DNA of 64,000 bases from Lepidodermella squamata. Lineage: Eukaryota > Animalia > Gastrotricha. The notes beneath the pieces were generated by a model, which did not search any database, had not been told where the DNA came from, and saw only the letters and a program-made list of their open reading frames with translations. The DNA lies in the NCBI GenBank assembly GCA_047495785.1, contig JBLDXI010000021.1:2418001-2482000 (forward strand), in the 5' to 3' direction. Position numbers and translations under genes: made by a program. The stretch's first letter is position 1. Each line of letters starts with the position of its first letter. This document shows positions 14,201 through 57,235 of this stretch, one piece after another.

Positions 14201-14960
14201 TAGTTTTTGGAGCACTGTTCCTACTTACCACCCGTGACTAAAACAGGCAACAACATGCACATGAAGCTACAATAAGACTCTTGTTTATAGCACTTCGTTT
14301 GCGCATCCAGCGAAATCTAATGGCTACAATGCTAATATGCATGTAGACCTAAATCATCGGCGGTAGTTTACAGCAAACATAGGTATGTCACATTGAAATG
14401 TGTACAGTGTACAGTTTTTAACAAAAATCGTCATTAAATGTGTTTAATTTAGCGGTCCCGTGAACCGTGAACCACCAGGATAACCAATAGGAGGAATCCG
14501 AATTTGAAGTCATTTCCCGAATTCGGGAAAGTGATTGGTATAAACTCAAAGTTTGTGAGATCGTTAGTTCCTTAAGAATATCAGATTTCAGATACTGATT
14601 CATCTATTCAGATTCCAAAAAGTACCTGGTGGACATTCTGTTGATTCACGGGACAGTCGAATTATACACATCTAACATTAGCAGTCCGCAGTCCCAAGAC
14701 CCGAACATTCGCCGAGGAGAGAGTTTGACACATTTCAGAACTTCAATTCTCAGCCAGCTACAGCATAACGTAAAACTACCCACAGGGCGCATGCATTTCG
14801 ATTTTTGAATCGCCCGCTTTATTTTGAGAAAATTTGATAATTAATTTTTTATTTATTAATCATACTGAATAGAATTATTGAGTAATCTGCATAGAAAATC
14901 ATTTGGAGGCGTTTTCAAAAAAAGAAAAAAGAGACTTTTGCAACTTCGCCGGGGGATAAG

Positions 14961-15460
14961 TTTTGCGCGATTTCGAGCTTTTGACACGGGGATACGCCCG
15001 CAGCCACCGCTAAAGGGCTCGTACGTAGACGTGGGTGGTCATACTCATTACTAATCTAATGGTCCTGACATCTTTGTGGAATTCACTACCTAATAATATC
15101 ACCAGTATTCACTCTACATTGATTTTTGCTACCAAAGTGCGCCATTATATTCTCGAGTTCCTACCTATCCTGCCGAACATGTAATCTTTGTACCATTCCT
15201 CCTGTATCTAAGTATGTATACAGTTGTATGCATCATGCTGTAATTAATTTTATGCAGTCCCGGACGCCTTGTTCTTTGCGCTCGAGCCTCCCTTTGCCAC
15301 CTTTGTACTCATTCTGAATTTTGTAAACATTATGACTAATAATAGGTGCAAAGCGAACGGTAAGCAATAAAGATTTGAGATTTGAGAATGGTCGAAATGC
15401 TCAGAGGAGCCATCAATTAAATCGTTTGTCGTCATCCTCAGTCAGGCCTGGTTTTAGGCT
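14961..15460. repeat. Copy A of a dispersed repeat family, interrupted by an insertion at about 15066-15397
   Basis: Shares blocks gagcttttgacacgggatac and ctcagagga...taaatcgtttgtcgtcatcctcag with 25277-25670 and 56970-57235. Confidence 0.6.
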
Positions 15461-15464
15461 TGTC

Positions 15465-16056
15465 AGCACCCTACCCTATCTAACTATATTCAGAGGGTGG
15501 CTAGGTTTGAATTGCTATCCTTAAACCAAAGATGGTTAATCCGCGATCTAACGATGGCGTTCAAAATAATTAATAATATGTCTCATCCTCTAGAATTCGA
15601 TACTTTCTTTCTCAAACCTAATCTCTCTACTACTCGACATCATTCTAATAACAAATTAACAATTCCTCAACATTCACTTTGCCCTAGGGGCTTTAGCTTT
15701 GCTATTAGAACTGCCAAATTATGGAACCTTCTACCTGCCTCTATCACTAACATTACTTCGATAAATCTTTTTGTTAACTCGTGCAAAAAATTTATATTGG
15801 AAGAATGGCCTGTCCTTACAAATCTGGCCTTAGTTAAATAAAACTAATTATTATTTTAATCACCTTATCTAATGTATGCGTGCCTTGCGCGCATCATCCT
15901 ATATAAACATTCTTATATGCTGTGTACGGTCGCCTTACTTCTGCGCTCGATCCTCTTTTTGCCCATTTATAAATCCATTCCTAAACACTGTTATTCTTTT
16001 ATAAAATTAAAAAAAAAATGGTGCAATCAGAAGGAAAACAATAAAATGATGATGAA
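15465..16056 (+). mobile_element. 5'-truncated LINE (CR1/L2-like): ORF2 C-terminus plus 3'UTR
   Basis: LLSLNQRWLIRDLTMAFKII...TRHH...SFAIRTAKLWNLLP is typical of CR1/L2 ORF2 ends. It finishes with AATAAA and an (ATG)n tail. No TSD was found. Confidence 0.85.
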
Positions 16057-22284: not shown

Positions 22285-23375
22285 TCACAGTAGAAGTGAC
22301 CAGTTGTGCGGAGAAACATTGAGATCAATCGGCCAGGTAACTTCTGTTGCAAACGCCTCCAAAACAGGACGTTTGAAAGTGTTAAGCAATTCCGAGGCTG
22401 ACCGGATTGCTCGGTCATTCGTGCTTAACAAGGTCGCAATCGTATCTGCATAGATTTAGTCAATTGTAAACGAATCGTTTAATAAAATTTAAGAGCTTTT
22501 ATACCTTGCGCTGGCAAATAAGGACCAGCCTTCTCATGAAGATTGTCCATTACGCTTTTGACTTTTTCGGGTGGAGTTTCCTGAATGAAGTTTGCTAGTC
22601 TAACAACTTGGCTCATGAGATCTGATGCTGTTTTTGTGATAGGCTCCGAGTTTTCTGCGTCACTGCCAATGACAATTGAGGCAGCAATATCGATATTACG
22701 CAGCGTCCATGTGGGAAACAGTCGCGTTGATATGTCGTGAGCGAAGCATACAACTTTCACAGCTGAAAATGGTGATTTGTGTTGGGAAGCCTGCATGGAT
22801 CACTAGGTCAACAAATTTTACTGAGGGAAAGAAATCGAATCATACCTTGGTGTCAATAATCGCTAGATAATTCAGCAACGCGTCAGCAGAACCTTCAATA
22901 GCGTGACTAACAGAGAAGATAATTAACAGATACTCTTCCTAAACTTAATGCTTACAGCGTCTGCGTAGGGTAAACTAAGCCCATGCCGGTTAGGGGTTCC
23001 AATAATTGACCGTTCGGGCTGAGCTCAGTTACTCTTTGGACGGCCGCTTCTAAGAACGTCAGGGCCGTTGTTGAGCTCGTTTCATTTTCCAACTTAGCTA
23101 CGTAGAATAATCGGTGCACCAAAACGCGCTGAAAAAATTTGTGAAAATAGTAATTCAAGCATCAAGCAGATTACGAGTAAAATTAACACTCGGATTAATG
23201 CGTACGAAAAGCTTACTCTATCCGACTCTCCCCTAAATCGCCGTTCAATTTTACAATGTAGCAAAGATGTCAGAGGCCATTCTAACTCGAACGCTTCGGC
23301 AAGTAATAAATCATCATCATTGGCTGATTTGCTCTTTCTGCTGAAAGTACGCTTGGGCTGAACGCGTTTATTCAT
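22285..23375 (-). CDS. TEX47: TEX47/C7orf62-like protein, 5 exons from the proximal first exon
   Basis: Spliced product contains HRLFYVAKL, LTGMGLVYP, HAIEGS, HDISTRLFPTW, YLPAQD and TEVTWP, matching the recalled TEX47 family pattern. Confidence 0.75.
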
Positions 23376-23830
23376 GGTGAAAATAATATTTTACGAGTTT
23401 CAACGGCATCAAAATTAATATTGCTTCCTACTAATAACGAGCAACGTGCTGACACTGAGGTGGACACTAAGCAACGACAATCGATTCACGCTGCGAGTAA
23501 TTACTGAAAATCACAAGTACATGTTTACGATGGATCGATCCAAAATGAGCGGCATAATGAACTTGAGGCAAGCGTAATCATTCTTCATTATAAACAAATT
23601 AATAATTTATGAGTAGCCATAGCGAGGTGTTTCACGGTAGTAACTGCATTCGCTTACTTCCTCTTCGCAGGAAAATTCTGCTTCACAACTTGAATATAAA
23701 TTAATTTGCTTTGCCTTCGTTGACCAAAACGAAAAACTGTGCATTTTTATAATCCCTAAGATATTCTACTACCCCGTAACAGTCGATAACTGAGCCTAAC
23801 ATGTTATTAGCTGAAAGCCAAGGAAATTAC

Positions 23831-24001
23831 CTGCCCTGCGACTTGCAGTTTATTCTTTGTCAGCTGGAAAATAGACAAGCCAAGTTTTCCTATGTCCGAC
23901 TCATTCATAAGCTCATCGTAGTCGTCGAGATCATCGTCGTTCTTTGAATTTTTGCCACTCTTCAAAGTGCTTTTCGATTTATTCTTCGCTATCACTGGCA
24001 T
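23831..24001 (-). CDS. Candidate alternative first coding exon of the TEX47-like gene
   Basis: ATG-initiated 57-codon exon ending CAG|gtaatt (phase 0), compatible with the phase-0 acceptor before 23128. It shares a basic tract plus NDDDL with exon 23217-23375. Confidence 0.55.
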
Positions 24002-25161
24002 TTAAAGTCAATGTAACCAATAGTTAAATCTATATAAATGGGGAAGGAACTGATTATCATCGGATAAAATAATCAATGACAACGATTCAAAAATTGCATT
24101 TCACGTAATCACCAACTTACCCTTAGTGATAACTGACCAACTGAATTTAGCAATATCAATGCACATTGGGACCTAAAAATGTAATGCTTCGAAATTGGCC
24201 CAATGGTGTTTATCACATTTGTTACTGCTGTTAAGCAGGACATTTTGATGAAATTTGACGCCATTTTGACTGACCTTTTGATTCTCTGTCGAATGGCTCA
24301 TTTAAATTTGAGCCCAGCCATTTGAGACAAAAGATTCCTTCATGCCAAAGTACCATGGATCATTTTCGCCAGTTTCAATCTTACCGTATAGAGTCAACAT
24401 AAAATATCATCACTCATCCGACATAGTATCATCCAACTATAGATAAAGTACATATTTTAGCAAGCCAAGGATAGACAGGGTTGTTATTGTGGCAAGGCAT
24501 GGTATCAATGGAATACTCTTTACAATGTTTCTTCCAACAACAATGTTCATGTTCATAATCATGTTCATTATCTTCCTGCTTCCTATATGTGCAGACAGTG
24601 CAGACAGTAGCTTTGACAGTAGCTCGCTTTCCGTATGTAACCAATCGTCTGTAATATAATAACCAATAGCATGCCTACAATAAGTTTCGTCTATAACCTA
24701 TCATTACAGCATTACCCCGCTAACCCCTCTGCGCCACTTTGACGGCATACCCACTAATTCCCTCATTCCCACCGATGAAACATGTTTTAATGTTTGAGTT
24801 TGGCAAGGCTCGTATAACTTATGCGATAGTTTTCAATGCCTCAGGACTAATTCCCGTTAGAGTGGAGAGTGCCAAAGTGGCGCAAAGAAGTGACGTATCG
24901 TGACTAGATTCAATGATCGTTCAACTTCAACATTCCTGCACTTCTGGCGTTGGGTTCTATGTTGCATTTTAAGAGTTGTTTGTCGCTGATACCACGATTG
25001 GGACTTCGGAAACTTCTTGCGAGAGACAATTGAGGCATTACTATGGCAACGCAAACAAATAATTAATTTTCTTATTTTAAAATCAATTTAAATAAATTCC
25101 AAGCATGTATGTTGCTTAATGTCGATATCAATTATGTGCGTCTTTAGCAACCACCTACCAC

Positions 25162-25955
25162 CCTATAGCGTAAAGCTCTCGCGATTTTTTCACCAGCTCC
25201 GCCTTATTGCTTTAGCTTGAGTCCGTCAGGGCGAGAAGAAATCGTAACCTGATCCTGATCCTGATCCTGACAATGGGAAGTGCGATCGACTGGTGTCGCT
25301 TTTGGATGCTTTTAGCTTAAGGGTTTTTACTGATGTGATGCGACTTCGATTTTGAGCTTCTGACATGGATACACCCGCAGCTACCTCTTAAGGCCATACT
25401 GCTCTAATTACTCTTTGGACGGCCGCTTCTAAGAACGTCAGGGCCGTTGTTGAGCTCGTTTCATTTTCCAACTTAGCTACGTAGAATAATCGGTGCACCA
25501 AAACACGCTGAAAAAATTTGTGAAAATGATGTGATGCGACTTCGATTTTGAGCTTCTGACATGGATACACCCGCAGCTACCTCTTAAGGCCATACTGCTC
25601 TAATGGTCGGAATTCTCAGAGGAAACAATATCTAAATTGTTTGTTGTCATCCCGAGGCCCAGTTAGTGGTGTTCTGTAGAAGGGCCGTGCAGCCAGTACA
25701 GTCCTCTTGGATGCTTTTCGGACTAGCCACTACGCTTACCTTATACAGTGAAAATCAAAAGTTGCGCACGGTCAGGAATTGTTGAGTTGAAACTAGAAAT
25801 ATCTCACACGCGCAGGATCAGGATCAGGATCAGGATCAGGATCAGGATCAGGATCAGGATCAGGATCAGGATTTACGATTTCTCCTCGCCCTGACGGACT
25901 CAAGCTTTCGCCATAAGGCGGAGCTTGTGAGAAAATCGCGAGCTTACGCTCTAGG
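25162..25955. mobile_element. Non-autonomous inverted-repeat element with a captured host-gene fragment
   Basis: Arms 25162-25270 and 25814-25955 are imperfect reverse complements, each lined internally by (CCTGAT)n/(ATCAGG)n. Positions 25408-25527 copy 23029-23148. No TSD is evident. Confidence 0.85.
25814..25872 (+). repeat. (AGGATC)n hexanucleotide tandem repeat, about 10 copies; shorter reverse-complement array at 25249-25270
   Basis: Read directly from the sequence. Confidence 0.95.
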
Positions 25956-26139
25956 AAAGTTTGAACTGGTTTACTAACTACTTAATTGAAATCCCTACTC
26001 CTGGTACTCCAGTTATTGCTGACTGTTTCTCCAGGGCCCAGGCATTAGTGCCCAGGCGCTCGAACTATTTTCAGCTCCAAGCTTGGGTTGAACTCAGCTA
26101 TAAATAAAAAGTGTAACTCGGACAGACCAAGAAGTTTTA

Positions 26140-26343
26140 ATAGTTTTAAAAATATGAATATTCATGAGGCGTTAATTAATATTCCGAAGCCCTCAATTCT
26201 GTCAGAAAAATTATGGAAAAATTATTTTTGATTTGTTTTAACCGTGCTATAAGTGCTCAAATTTTTCCGCAATTTTTGGCTCTCAACTAAGAATGTCCTA
26301 GTTTCATGACATCTCATGAATATATTCATATTATTGAAACTAT
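26140..26343. mobile_element. Degenerate palindromic MITE
   Basis: atagttttaaaaatatgaatattcatgag pairs with ctcatgaatatattcatattattgaaactat. An inner pair is aaaaattatggaaaaatt / aatttttccgcaattttt. Confidence 0.6.
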
Positions 26344-27298
26344 CCCCCTTTTCTAGGAGCTATTTTTGGAGCTCGTGAAAAAGGCGTCATTTTGGTCCGT
26401 TTTGCTGGAGATAAACAGCCTCATTTCGCACGTGCGAAAAAATTCAACTAGCATCGCCTCAATTCCACCGTGCGGATCTTTTGATTGTCACTGTAGTCAT
26501 GTCGTTGAGTCGTTCGCGGCGCCTGGCTTGTCAGCTGTCAGTACCCTACGTTACCTACCTACATACATACCCTACTCTTACGACGCAACCAACGCAGCTC
26601 TCGGGTTTCTTCAACCTGATTCAACCTGAAGAAGAACTGGTGTCCCGTCGACGAACTACGTTGACACCTTAAATGACTCTCCCTAGCTGAGAGGAAGCCG
26701 AAATCCGAGGTGATCAGTGACTCCGCAGGTCTGACAGCCAGACCCCCTGATAGTCTGATAGCACTACCTAAGACCATACAAACATCATCCGTGTCTCGTA
26801 GGCTTGGTGTCAGACTAACCTGGCATAAATGTCGGAATCTGACATTTATGCCAAAGCCAGTTTCCGAGTGGACCAAAGCATGAGACTTACTGTAGGTCTC
26901 ATGGACAGAATAACTGTATTTTTATCCGTACTTGGCGATCTTTAGAAGGAGCTGGGCTACTTAAATAAACACTCATTTTCGGCAAATCGAACTTTTTATT
27001 TTCAGCGTGGTATGTATTTTCTGTGGAACATTGTTAGACTAACCTCATTAGAGAATCATCTTTCTTATCACTGCACCAACGTTCTTTGTCACAATCCTCA
27101 AAGACTGCTAAGCGTTGATCAAAAAATAGTCGAAGAAACTGTAATATATATCAAAATAAACTAGGACGTCAATTTCAGAAAGCCATTCTAAGCTGATTTC
27201 CCAGGATTGGCAGATTGCCTTCGACATTATGGCTCTTTATATGCCCAATGCCCAATGATTAAATTTTCTTCCTGGGGAACCTGTGGTTCCCTAGATCT

Positions 27299-27628
27299 GG
27301 AGCAGGGCATGACTCCCGTAATACCGAGCGCTGTCAAGCCATATGCCAAATTCGCGCAATGACGTCGGTTTTTACACTGAAATATAGACACTCAATTCTC
27401 TATCGATTGCATATAGGTATCTCTCTAGAAGAAATCAACAGGAAAAACCTTTACGCCAATGCGCATTTAAGCGCGTGCAACGATTGACGATTTACCCACT
27501 TTCTATTTGCCTGTTGATTTTATCGAGCGAGGTAACTATATCAAATTTACATTTTGGTGTAAAAACCGACATGATGACGAACTTGGTCTTTGACCCGACG
27601 AAGCGCGGTATTTACGTAGCTCAGCTCC
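27299..27628. mobile_element. Degenerate fold-back MITE of about 330 bp
   Basis: Nested inverted blocks: cgtaataccg/cggtatttacg, gtcggtttttacac/gtgtaaaaaccgac and aaatcaacagg/cctgttgattt. Confidence 0.75.
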
Positions 27629-27923
27629 TTTCGTAAATAACCGAATCTGAGGGGCCCAAGCCATGCTAAATCATCAGTACTATTGGAGATGTACCAAAGA
27701 ATTTTGAGAGAAAACGCGAGCCAAAATCTTCAACACTGATGATGCTTTACAAAAAAGCAATCAGCTAGATGGTAAATGAGAGTAAATGAGACCAATACAC
27801 ACTTAGGCGAAAGGACAGCTTTTCTTCATAGATATGCAATATTCAGTCATCACTCATTTTTCATATAATCTTATAATCTATAGGCCAACTTGATGATTAG
27901 GGTGAACGCTAGAACGACATTAC

Positions 27924-29062
27924 ATGCCTCAAATTGGAAATATGAAGGTGGGCAATCGCGGCAGTGCTCTGAATTGTTTATTCGTTGGCCCTCTTGGAAG
28001 TGGAAAAACCAGCTTGTTAAAATGTCTCAGTGCGGGCTTGGATGCCTTCAACGATACGGCTGATAATCAGAAGCGGTCTGAAAGAGAAATGCTGTTTTCA
28101 ACTATATGTCCGACGGTTTGAAAATGTCCACAATTATTTCATTAATTAGCTAATATAATTTAGGTCGGGACTGAAATGGCCAGCTTGCAGTTTCAAACAA
28201 AACCCTTGCTTTCATCACCATGGACGCATAGAGCACGCGTTAGCAACTCCCAAAGAATGCGACTTTCAGCAACTGGGAAATGCCCGGAGACAATCACAAT
28301 ATCAGCACGAGAAGTCGGTGGATCGTTGCAAGCATTATGGCCACGATATTTCTCCGAAGCTGATGCCTTGTGTGAGTTATCAGCTACCATATTCTGGATG
28401 AATGTATTCCCTAAGCTTAGCTATATAATTAGACTGGATTACGTGTTACAGGATTTATTGGCTTTGGGACATTTATAAGTTGCAGACAGCGGAAATTCAA
28501 AATAAGTATAACATTTGATTTTGGGCCCTATAGAAAAAAGCTGCTTTATTTTTATCCAAAACTCATTTGCTATTTCATTTGCAGAACTCATTACTTATTT
28601 CGGGGAAATGTAATGGGAGCTTTGAAGGAGTGGCGTCCTATTATAGTATGTCTCATAGATTATATGATGAATTAGATGATAATGTGCTTAATGTCATGAA
28701 TTTGACAAATCAATATAATAACATTTTTTGCAGGTATTGTAGTGGATGGTAGCAACCTCCTATCGCCATGCGGGAGCTCTGCTTTTTCGTTCGTATCAAT
28801 CGTGGATATATTGACTAACGAGATAGTAAGAAAGATTCCAGTCGCAATCATATTATCGAAAGTCGAAGATGATGACGCAAAAGATGACACATCATCACAA
28901 CTCTCCGAGGTCATGAGCTTATCTGATCTAATCTTCAATGTTGAACAATTTCTCAGCGAAAGAGACTCCACCGGGTTGAACATCTCAATATGTACCAGCG
29001 CGAAAACTGGAGCAGGATTACAAGATCTGGCTCGTTGGCTCACCTTATTGTCCGTCCCGTGA
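27924..29062 (+). CDS. ARL16: ARF-like GTPase ARL16; exons 27924-28115, 28164-28371, 28734-29062
   Basis: P-loop GPLGSGKT, PT|VG, the ARL16-type REVGG (instead of DxxG) followed by LW, IVVDGS and TSAKTGAGL. Confidence 0.8.
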
Positions 29063-55536: not shown

Positions 55537-56969
55537 TTGGGAGTCTCGTAAAGTTTATGGCAAAATTTAAATATTTTCTCTAGTGAGGGTGAACACGTTT
55601 TCTTGCATATTCAGCCTTAAATAGCGATGTCGAACGATAGTTCCTATGGCTATTAGGAACGCCTGATCAACATCTGTAAATTTGATAAATTTGCTTGCTG
55701 AATGAAACTGGAGATTGGAGTTGGGAATTTCGGCATCTTTAGACAAGCCTTATAGAAAACTTCATAGGATTAACCCTTCAACAGCCGACGGTATCGTTTT
55801 TCATATGAGAATGCCGCCTTTTTGTCATCCCGAGCGTCGTTGTTAGAACGCACGAAAATGTACCCTTGTTCAGGGCGGGTTAAACACTAATATTGTTAGT
55901 CGCACGTAAATAGTACACTATTGGACAAAAAAATGTCGCACGTCCATTTTGCATGTTTTTCTTCCATATCAAAAAGATCTTGCAAACCGTTGCAATTTCT
56001 GCCAATAATATTGCTCAATGAGCGGAGTAGTTTGAGCCGAAAATCTCCAAGATTCAGGGGTGGATCTGAGCAATTAATTTTTGGTCCATTGATCAGGTTG
56101 ATTAACTGTCAGGTTAATGAGAGCTAACTTCTGTATGCGAGAGATAGGTTGATCAAGATTCCAAGCCGCAGAGCTGTTGAACATGGTTCATATGGTACTT
56201 TTACGATCAAGTTTGTGAGACAATTAAGCAAGATTGATTGTGCATATAAGCTGCATACCATTTTTCCGGTTTACTTGAGAACTAGACTGGAATATTCCAC
56301 CGCTACGGTTATTACGAATTTTGCAGGCGAGTTGTACCAAGGTTCAGAAGGTCTAGTGGGGAGTGGGAACTTTGGGTGAATAATAGAAAGAGATGGGATC
56401 CAACTATCCATGTCCAGATTCAACCTAAACATCGTATGTAATAAAACGCCCGTAGCACTAAGCACAAAGTCAACGCTGGTCGATTTAGAAGGTGAAACTA
56501 CGTCGAAACGGAGACTTTAAAGTTGCAATCCCCGGTCAATTAAGTCAACAAGCGGGAAAAACGAGAGAAAGTATGGTAAGTACGGTGACATGCTTTCTGA
56601 AAATGTATAGCTGGGCCCAGGACGAAAAACTTTAGCTTGGATCTTGGACTTTGGACTCATCCGCGGTTTATGCGGATGCGGAACTATCCTTTGAGTCGCC
56701 CCCCGTTTTGTTCGCCAGGATGCTTCGCTGACCGTGCGGGACCTTTTTCTTGGGTTTCGCGGGTTTTCGTTTAATAACTGCATATAAACTCTTAATTTTG
56801 AAAATTAAAGCTGCTAAATAATAAATCTTGTTGCATTTTCAGAAAGTAGTATGACCTCGACATTAATTTAAATAAAATTAACTTGTTCGCGGCGGCGGAG
56901 TTTTGACGCTGCAGACTCGATATACTTTCGTCCCTTTCCGCTTCTACCTACCCTACCTGCCCACCTTAG

Positions 56970-57235
56970 AAGTGCCCAGTGCGATCGACTTATTTCGCTT
57001 CATGGAGCGTTTTAGCTCAAGGCTTAAGGTATTTGGCAGATGTGATACGACTTTTGATTTTTCATTTCGAGCTGCTGACACGGATAAGCAACCAACCAAC
57101 GCTTAAGCACATAGCACGTAGCGCGTATATATGTGGGTGGCCATAACTACTCCTCTAATTGCCTCTGCTCAGAGGAACCCACAACTAAATTGTTTTCGTC
57201 ATCCTCAGTTCTCAGTCAGAGCCAGTTATGGGCCA
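56970..57235. repeat. Copy C of the dispersed repeat family
   Basis: agtgcgatcgact, gatgtgatacgactt, gagctgctgacacggata and ctcagaggaa..taaattgttttcgtcatcctcag are collinear with 25277-25670. Confidence 0.7.

What the first reader, a model, noticed from the sequence alone, without database searches (positions are those of the whole stretch)
25162..25955. Inverted-repeat element has captured a 120-bp intron-exon piece of the neighbouring TEX47 gene
Seen in sequence: 25408-25527 matches 23029-23148 at 119 of 120 nt in the same orientation. The piece comprises 20 nt of intron, the 3' splice site and 100 nt of exon 2. It sits between two perfect 78-bp direct copies of the element's own interior (25331-25408 and 25527-25604), with only single-base overlaps at the junctions. 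Because intron sequence is included, the capture was DNA-based, not retro-transcribed. Inference: replication or repair of the element jumped 2.4 kb to the gene, copied 120 nt, and re-annealed 78 nt back. This would be a very recent Pack-TIR-like transduplication caught beside its donor. The element can fold back and lies upstream of the gene, so it could also supply gene-matching RNA or a decoy splice acceptor.
Basis: partly seen in the sequence, partly recalled or inferred. Interest (0 to 1): 0.85.

Follow-up and report, generated by a model that had tools for sequence, protein, structure and literature searches.

The report
Local gene-copy scar in nested repeats
A 120-base piece of the neighbouring TEX47 gene really was copied 2.4 kb away between two identical 78-base repeats, but it sits in a pile of unrelated nested repeats rather than in one gene-capturing transposon, and is most likely a recent, silent DNA-repair scar of a known kind.

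Summary
DNA-run contigs fork exactly where this structure predicts, at roughly one haplotype's depth, so it is not a misassembly; that run is probably the assembly's own amplified sample, so support is not independent. The 'inverted-repeat element' is not one element. Its right arm is part of a 242-nt tailed, LINE/SINE-like insert (GCGC target duplication) inside a Tc1-like MITE (25746-26493), itself inside a ~340-nt dispersed repeat; the left arm is a separate truncated copy. So this is not a Pack-TIR. It is a single-copy, directly oriented DUP-NML-DUP (local templated-insertion cycle) with chance-level 1-nt junction homology, exactly equivalent to a 2.38-kb tandem duplication plus a 2.18-kb deletion. 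Two RNA runs splice TEX47 normally and show no contig over the copy. Earlier, unchecked scan notes report similar repair scars and many giant target duplications on other DNA of this genome; this insert may be a transposon-free example of that pattern.

The parts
23029..23148 (-). Donor segment: last 20 nt of TEX47 intron (23129-23148), 3' splice site and first 100 nt of exon 2 (23029-23128)
   Evidence: intron 23129-23216 spliced in two RNA-like runs
25408..25527 (-). Copied 120-nt piece, same orientation as donor, 119/120 identical (25505 A versus 23126 G); first and last base shared with the flanking 78-mers
   Evidence: contig fork at 23096 = 23126-30
25331..25408 (+). First copy of the 78-nt duplicated target (interior of the dispersed 'family I' repeat)
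   Evidence: single copy in relative at 56978-57219
25527..25604 (+). Second, identical copy of the 78-nt target
   Evidence: contig fork at 25575 = 25605-30
25271..25745 (+). Family I dispersed repeat, left part (the actual host of the copy); class not determined
   Evidence: relatives at about 14900-15474 and 56978-57219; many contigs at 85% or more
26496..26549 (+). Family I repeat, right end, separated from the left part by the MITE
   Evidence: joints 25742/25744 to 26496; same end motif at 15457-15474, 0 expected by chance
25746..26493 (.). Tc1/mariner-type MITE: CAGTG termini, TA duplication at 25744-25745 and 26494-26495, about 500 nt without its inner insert, imperfectly palindromic, high copy; does not contain the TEX47 copy
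   Evidence: empty-site joints and depth in the thousands
25814..26055 (-). 242-nt 5'-truncated LINE/SINE-like 3' end inside the MITE: GCGC target duplication (25810-25813, 26056-26059), reading-frame end, 3' hairpin, (ATCCTG)10 tail; contains the 'right arm' 25848-25955
   Evidence: joint 25809 to 26056 with 4 shared letters and contigs running through 25955; retroelement class is inference (no RT seen, Pfam blank)
25162..25270 (+). 'Left arm': separate, shorter 5'-truncated copy of the same tailed family in the opposite orientation; CCTA at 25162-25165 is shared with the flank
   Evidence: spanned with its left flank by contig 24675-25246
23217..23401 (-). TEX47 first exon used in the RNA runs (coding from 23375)
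   Evidence: (X3 record 16), conserved in a relative
22956..23128 (-). TEX47 exon 2
22505..22906 (-). TEX47 exons 3 (22846-22906) and 4 (22505-22790)

Best explanation
A one-off, recent, host-made local templated insertion. Shown: the product is target(78)-donor(120)-target(78), all in direct orientation, with the donor 2.4 kb away, 1-nt junction overlaps, one copy only, lying in an intergenic nest of repeats. Inferred: a nick, break or stalled fork in the family I repeat was repaired in one event in which synthesis left the template at 25408, copied 23029-23148 from the same chromosome (or a loose 120-nt fragment was ligated into a break with a 78-nt stagger), and rejoined at 25331, so 78 nt were replicated twice. 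One substitution arose during or after copying. No transposase acted on it, it is probably on one haplotype only, and it is probably inert. This is the geometry called directly oriented DUP-NML-DUP or a cycle of templated insertion; it works like the transposition-independent, cis-biased gap filling that makes single-copy Pack-TIRs, but the host is not a TIR element.
For: Exact anatomy. Relatives of the host repeat have one target copy and no insert (RNA joint 25346-25588), so the insert is derived. Contig forks at 23096 and 25575 are the two positions predicted for 31-letter words if the copy, its private base and the duplication are in the reads. Depth over the copy (193) against thousands over the MITE and tailed insert shows it was not amplified; arithmetic gives 56-82 for the insert allele where single haplotypes run at about 65 and both at 88-133. 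Divergence 1/198 (95% range 0.01-2.8%) is like that between alleles here (about 0.5%). Donor base G stands in both RNA runs, so A is private to the copy. Cis bias under 5 kb is typical of such captures (PMC8277862); same junction layout in PMC6902434 and PMC7025897.
Against: Junction homology is at chance level (1 nt each; chance of at least 1 nt is 0.44), weak for a template-switch mechanism; only junction 1 has a marginal imperfect match (about 5% of positions score as well at 8 nt). Gap filling in Pack-TIRs usually leaves a small gap, not a 78-nt duplication. Sequence alone cannot tell one event from two. The only DNA run is probably the assembly's own sample, and only contigs, not reads, could be laid. 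Heterozygosity is a depth estimate.
Confidence: 0.55

Rival explanations
1. Two ordinary events: a tandem duplication of 23030-25408 (2379 nt, taking in the TEX47 promoter and first exons) followed by deletion of 2183 nt from the second copy, leaving only its two ends.
For: Simulating these two steps reproduces the window letter for letter except 25505. Explains direct orientation, donor upstream of target and blunt-like junctions without special machinery. Earlier notes suggest duplications are common in this genome (unchecked).
Against: Needs two independent events on one haplotype within a short time (1 change in 198 nt); no intermediate seen, though only one animal was examined.
Confidence: 0.2
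2. RNA-templated insertion: a LINE or Penelope reverse transcriptase primed at a nick after 25408 on an unspliced, chromatin-tethered TEX47 transcript fragment, and the 78-mer is a long target-site duplication.
For: The geometry fits target-primed reverse transcription on the minus strand; unspliced RNA would carry the intron piece; a relative of the host repeat carries a LINE-like 3' end inserted within 4 nt of the same site (15058/15387); earlier notes list LINE and Penelope insertions with 162-1174-nt duplications (unchecked).
Against: No poly(A) or repeat tail; the RNA 3' end would be mid-exon; landing 2.4 kb from the source is improbable for diffusible RNA; the intron end of the copy (-20/-19) misses the best branch-point motifs (-14, -23), so a lariat stop is not supported.
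Confidence: 0.1
3. Artefact of whole-genome amplification (phi29 chimera) fixed in the assembly.
For: The genome is very probably the single-animal MDA/HiFi gastrotrich assembly of PMC11660948 (inference, see report); MDA chimeras join nearby segments; no unamplified DNA run was available.
Against: Only 11 of 475 MDA chimeras were direct and under 10 kb apart, and 91% of those had 2 nt or more of homology (PMC1855051); here two such joins with 1 nt each plus a substitution are needed; insert depth equals about a whole haplotype, not a rare molecule from a many-celled animal.
Confidence: 0.07
4. One reading: a mobile inverted-repeat (TIR/foldback) element 25162-25955 captured the piece, can move it, and may supply regulatory RNA or a decoy acceptor.
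For: The arms pair strongly in folding (z -14); TA lies at both outer ends; a true gene-carrying TIR element was noted elsewhere in this genome (s1-422739, unchecked).
Against: The right end at 25955 is crossed without a break by contigs of other copies, and lies in an insert nested in a MITE that extends to 26493; arms are 87% identical with one-directional tails; the real MITE does not contain the copy; no second copy; no RNA contig on 25380-25533 while exon 2 is covered at depth 79 and 6 without the A base.
Confidence: 0.05

Closest known systems
Directly oriented DUP-NML-DUP rearrangements (PMC6902434) and cycles of templated insertion / local jumps (PMC7025897)
   Same: Two junctions; two short segments duplicated in direct orientation around a single-copy interval; host segment re-replicated around the inserted template.
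   Different: Far smaller (78 and 120 nt, 2.2-kb interval) than the human disease and cancer cases; junction homology only 1 nt; germline of a small invertebrate.
Single-copy Pack-TIRs made by transposition-independent gap filling (Tan et al. 2021, PMC8277862)
   Same: Single copy, donor under 5 kb away in cis, 100-300 nt, DNA with intron and exon, inserted inside a repeat, short or no microhomology.
   Different: Host is not a TIR element and the flanking inverted repeats are not its termini; target is duplicated by 78 nt rather than gapped; no chimeric transcript seen.
Multicopy Pack-TIRs and Pack-MULEs (Ssk-FB4, FoSTeST model; PMC8277862)
   Same: Gene fragment with intron inside repeated DNA; template switching invoked.
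   Different: No transposition after capture, no extra copies, no distinct target duplications, donor adjacent.
3' ends of stringent-type LINEs and their SINEs (CR1/L2-like; 3' stem-loop plus repeat unit, PMC4176376)
   Same: The two 'arms' have a 3' hairpin, a short-repeat tail of variable length, variable 5' truncation and, for one, a 4-nt target duplication.
   Different: No reverse transcriptase frame could be retrieved, so the clade is not shown.
Tc1/mariner-derived MITEs (own knowledge: TA target duplication, CAGT-type ends)
   Same: 25746-26493 has TA duplication, CAGTG termini, about 500 nt, high copy.
   Different: It lies beside, not around, the copied gene piece.

Membership tests
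Pack-TIR | Captured sequence flanked by the two termini of one and the same TIR element | tested here: not met
   Right arm is internal to a tailed insert nested in a MITE that ends at 26493; contigs cross 25955; left arm is a separate copy
Pack-TIR | Target-site duplication around the whole element | tested here: inconclusive
   TA at 25164-25165 and 25952-25953, but the right TA is part of the repeat family's own sequence, which continues to 26055
Pack-TIR | Non-TE insert over 100 nt, 90% or more identical to a unique parent, DNA-level (intron kept) | tested here: met
   120 nt, 99.2%, unique coding parent
Pack-TIR | Empty form of the host repeat exists | tested here: met
   Relatives with one target copy and no insert; an empty allele at this very locus is suggested by depth only
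Multicopy Pack-TIR / Pack-MULE | Further transposed copies carrying the capture | tested here: not met
   Depth over the copy 193 against 110-130 single-copy background; none in window; whole genome could not be searched
Templated-insertion cycle / direct DUP-NML-DUP | [quoted passage not shown] | tested here: met
   25408 to 23029 and 23148 to 25331
Templated-insertion cycle / direct DUP-NML-DUP | Both junctions arose in one event | not testable with these tools
   Sequence is identical to tandem duplication plus deletion
Microhomology-mediated switching (MMBIR/FoSTeS, polymerase theta) | Junction microhomology above chance (2 nt or more) | tested here: not met
   1 nt at both junctions; chance 0.44 each
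Retro-transcribed insertion (LINE-mobilised RNA) | 3' poly(A) or repeat tail, spliced or lariat-bounded template | tested here: not met
   No tail; intron kept; end does not match best branch-point motifs
Retro-transcribed insertion (LINE-mobilised RNA) | Target-site duplication flanking the insert | tested here: met
   78 nt, perfect; unusually long
LINE/SINE 3' end (the two arms) | Short-repeat tail, 3' stem-loop, variable 5' truncation, short target duplication | tested here: met
LINE/SINE 3' end (the two arms) | Linked reverse-transcriptase frame or SINE head | tested here: inconclusive
   Only a 25-codon frame end is in the window; Pfam blank; Rfam blank
MDA chimera | Low-depth, mostly inverted joins with 2 nt or more homology, absent from unamplified DNA | tested here: inconclusive
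   Depth, orientation and homology argue against; no unamplified DNA run available

The most novel reading that the evidence does not exclude
This animal's germline repair routinely re-replicates tens to hundreds of bases around anything that is inserted. Earlier notes describe giant target duplications around LINE, LTR, Penelope and Maverick elements in this genome; the TEX47 piece would be an insert with no transposon enzyme of its own that shows the same signature, pointing to a host repair trait rather than to the elements.
Probability: 0.2. Interest if true: 0.6.

Novelty: new member of a known kind. Interest (0 to 1): 0.3.

Why it matters
On its own it is a small, clean example of a known local copy-and-paste repair event caught beside its donor, in a phylum with almost no genome data; it does not show gene capture by a mobile element or a new regulatory role. 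Its main value is as one data point for a larger question raised by other notes on this genome: whether very long target duplications around many unrelated inserts come from host repair (or from amplification and assembly). It is also a caution: tail-to-tail copies of one retroelement can mimic a TIR transposon.

Tried and rejected
TIR element 25162-25955 with TA target duplication: my first reading, dropped. 120-mer as an abundant repeat: rejected (single-copy depth, spliced coding exon, 53% identical protein in a relative). Short-read misassembly: rejected by the two contig forks. Lariat/branch-point stop for the intron end: not supported; a rough window-wide branch-point survey gave no signal. 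Significant microhomology: not found (one search was a script error). Rfam on 24900-26900: nothing meaningful. Pfam on the two LINE-like frame ends: blank. Metagenome scans for the tailed family and for conspecific TEX47 loci: nothing; exact-protein look-up: nothing. Paper searches for RNA-templated insertions and long target duplications gave nothing close. Left out on the operators' instruction: TEX47 was searched exon by exon and the joined protein was not searched; the 30-letter loose ends have no reference and were not put into any search or script, so the tailed family could not be extended towards a reverse transcriptase.

Full report
OBSERVATION. The sequence is as described. 25408-25527 matches 23029-23148 at 119 of 120 positions in the same orientation (23126 G, 25505 A), between two identical 78-mers at 25331-25408 and 25527-25604, with one shared base at each junction. 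Apart from microsatellites these are the only exact direct repeats of 25 nt or more in the window. The donor gene is TEX47 on the minus strand (PF24787 in two exons). Two runs with spliced contigs remove introns 23129-23216, 22907-22955, 22791-22845 and 22446-22504, so the copy is 20 nt of intron, the acceptor and 100 nt of exon 2. A relative from freshwater-type metagenome assemblies has the same gene, exon layout and neighbours, so the donor is old single-copy coding sequence and the copy is derived.

IS IT IN THE READS? One DNA run (X1) holds the region. Its contigs break at 23096 and at 25575. With 31-letter words these are exactly the forks predicted by the private base (23126-30) and by the end of the second 78-mer (25605-30). 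The donor bin depth (110.9) is fully explained by the one contig starting at 23096, and the bin over the copy has 192.7; solving for the insert allele gives 56-82, where haplotype-specific contigs nearby run at about 65 and shared ones at 88-133. So the insert is on about one haplotype or more, probably heterozygous (estimate, not shown). X1 is probably the assembly's own sample. By inference the genome is that of the gastrotrich Lepidodermella squamata (PMC11660948): about 1991 windows on 147 pieces against 122.8 Mb in 157 contigs, 43% GC, about 100-fold long-read depth, and a companion run of another organism with 100.6 Mb of contigs. That assembly was made from one whole animal by phi29 amplification, so a chimera is the artefact to consider. 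It is unlikely: direct joins under 10 kb were 11 of 475 MDA chimeras and 91% of them had 2 nt or more of homology (PMC1855051), whereas two such joins with 1 nt, a substitution and haplotype-level depth are needed here.

THE 'ELEMENT' IS A NEST. The arms are real (87% over about 110 nt; they pair in folding), but one search shows they are not the ends of one unit. (a) Contigs of other genomic copies run through the supposed right end: 25886-26055 in X1 (depth 362, then 364 further letters) and 25857-26056 in X2. (b) Joints 25809 to 26056 with four shared letters show copies lacking 25814-26055; this 242-nt insert has a GCGC duplication, and on the minus strand a frame end, a hairpin (z -2.4) and ten ATCCTG units: the 3' end of a LINE or SINE by established features (PMC4176376); the clade is not shown. 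(c) It sits in a 500-nt MITE, 25746-26493, with CAGTG ends and TA duplication, for which empty sites are seen (joints 25742/25744 to 26496). (d) The MITE interrupts an older dispersed repeat of about 340 nt ('family I', 25271-25745 plus 26496-26549) with relatives at about 14900-15474 and 56978-57219. (e) The left arm is a shorter copy of the tailed family in the opposite orientation. The TEX47 piece lies in family I, outside the only true TIR element. Family I relatives have one target copy and no insert (RNA joint 25346-25588). Depth over the copy is near single-copy while MITE and tailed family reach thousands, so the capture has not spread.

MECHANISM. Shown: target-donor-target, direct orientation, donor 2.4 kb away, junction homology 1 nt each, which is chance level (0.44), divergence 1 in 198, comparable to allelic differences (about 0.5%). 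This is the layout of directly oriented DUP-NML-DUP (PMC6902434) and of a cycle of templated insertion (PMC7025897). Inferred (0.55): one host repair event, either two template jumps or ligation of a local fragment into a staggered break. A 2379-nt tandem duplication followed by a 2183-nt deletion reproduces the window letter for letter except 25505 and cannot be excluded (0.2). An unspliced RNA template is not excluded by the intron piece (0.1): the geometry fits target priming, and a family I relative took a LINE-like insertion within 4 nt of the same site, but there is no tail, the donor is adjacent, and the intron end misses the best branch-point motifs. Whether the inverted tailed copies or the hexamer tail stalled a fork is untested.

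FUNCTION. No support. Both RNA-like runs cover exon 2 with the donor base and give no contig on 25380-25533; contigs show presence, not absence, and the samples may lack the allele. Splicing into the copied acceptor would read 39 codons to a stop. In the fold-back the copy is in the loop between the arms, so it would not itself be double-stranded. Inert scar is the most likely state.

COMPARISON. It works like the transposition-independent, cis-biased captures that make single-copy Pack-TIRs (57% within 15 kb, most under 5 kb; PMC8277862), but fails the defining test of being flanked by both termini of one TIR element, and has a duplication where those have a small gap. It is a new member of a known kind of rearrangement.

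EARLIER SCAN NOTES (unchecked leads). Similar repair scars (s1-374020, s1-402254), a true gene-carrying TIR element (s1-422739), 'bracketing repeats' that were tails of separate elements (s1-421473) and many giant target duplications around LINE, LTR, Penelope and Maverick elements (s1-431998, s1-432014, s1-407630, s1-379696, s1-404961) were noted on other DNA of this genome. The last group suggests the novel case: long duplications as a host repair trait, of which this would be a transposon-free example (probability 0.2).

LIMITS. One lay of contigs only, with 27 joints and most pieces not displayed; no whole-genome search; organism inferred. TEX47 was searched exon by exon and the joined protein step was left out; the unreferenced loose-end letters were left out of all searches and scripts.

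VERDICT. Real, recent, single-copy local copy of a gene piece; not a gene-capturing inverted-repeat transposon; probably inert. Interest 0.3.

Noticed in passing
window 23831-24001 and 23217-23375 (minus); L001 4436-4591 and 4859-5017: TEX47 has two alternative first coding exons, both conserved in a related species (47% and about 40% identity); only the proximal one appears in the two RNA runs, so the distal one may be stage- or germline-specific.
   Followed up: partly
window 15058-15393: A family I relative carries a 322-nt CR1/L2-like 3' end (WNSLP-type frame end, short repeat tail) with a 7-nt target duplication within 4 nt of the site of junction 1 in the focal copy; possible nick-prone spot in this repeat.
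   Followed up: partly
window 23019-23028: The donor breakpoint abuts a perfect 10-nt palindrome; such palindromes start at 0.19% of window positions. Post hoc, unexplained.
   Followed up: partly
window 25271-25745, 26496-26549, 14900-15474, 56940-57219: Family I is an unclassified dispersed, transcribed repeat of about 340 nt without terminal inverted repeats, bordered by CCCTAC-like motifs at both ends; one RNA contig joins its end motif directly to its start, hinting at tandem or circularly permuted units.
   Followed up: partly
window 24001-27924 versus L001 3390-4436: The spacer between the divergently oriented TEX47 and small-GTPase-like genes is about 3.9 kb here and about 1 kb in the relative; the difference is largely the repeat nest.
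   Followed up: partly
window 24675-25246: The other haplotype in run X1 differs at 10 of 572 sites, six of them within 25078-25111, and its left arm is closer to the right arm at 25189 and 25213.
   Followed up: no
window 26821-26853 and 27359-27575: A 33-nt near-palindrome and a further small inverted-repeat (MITE-like) element in the same spacer.
   Followed up: no
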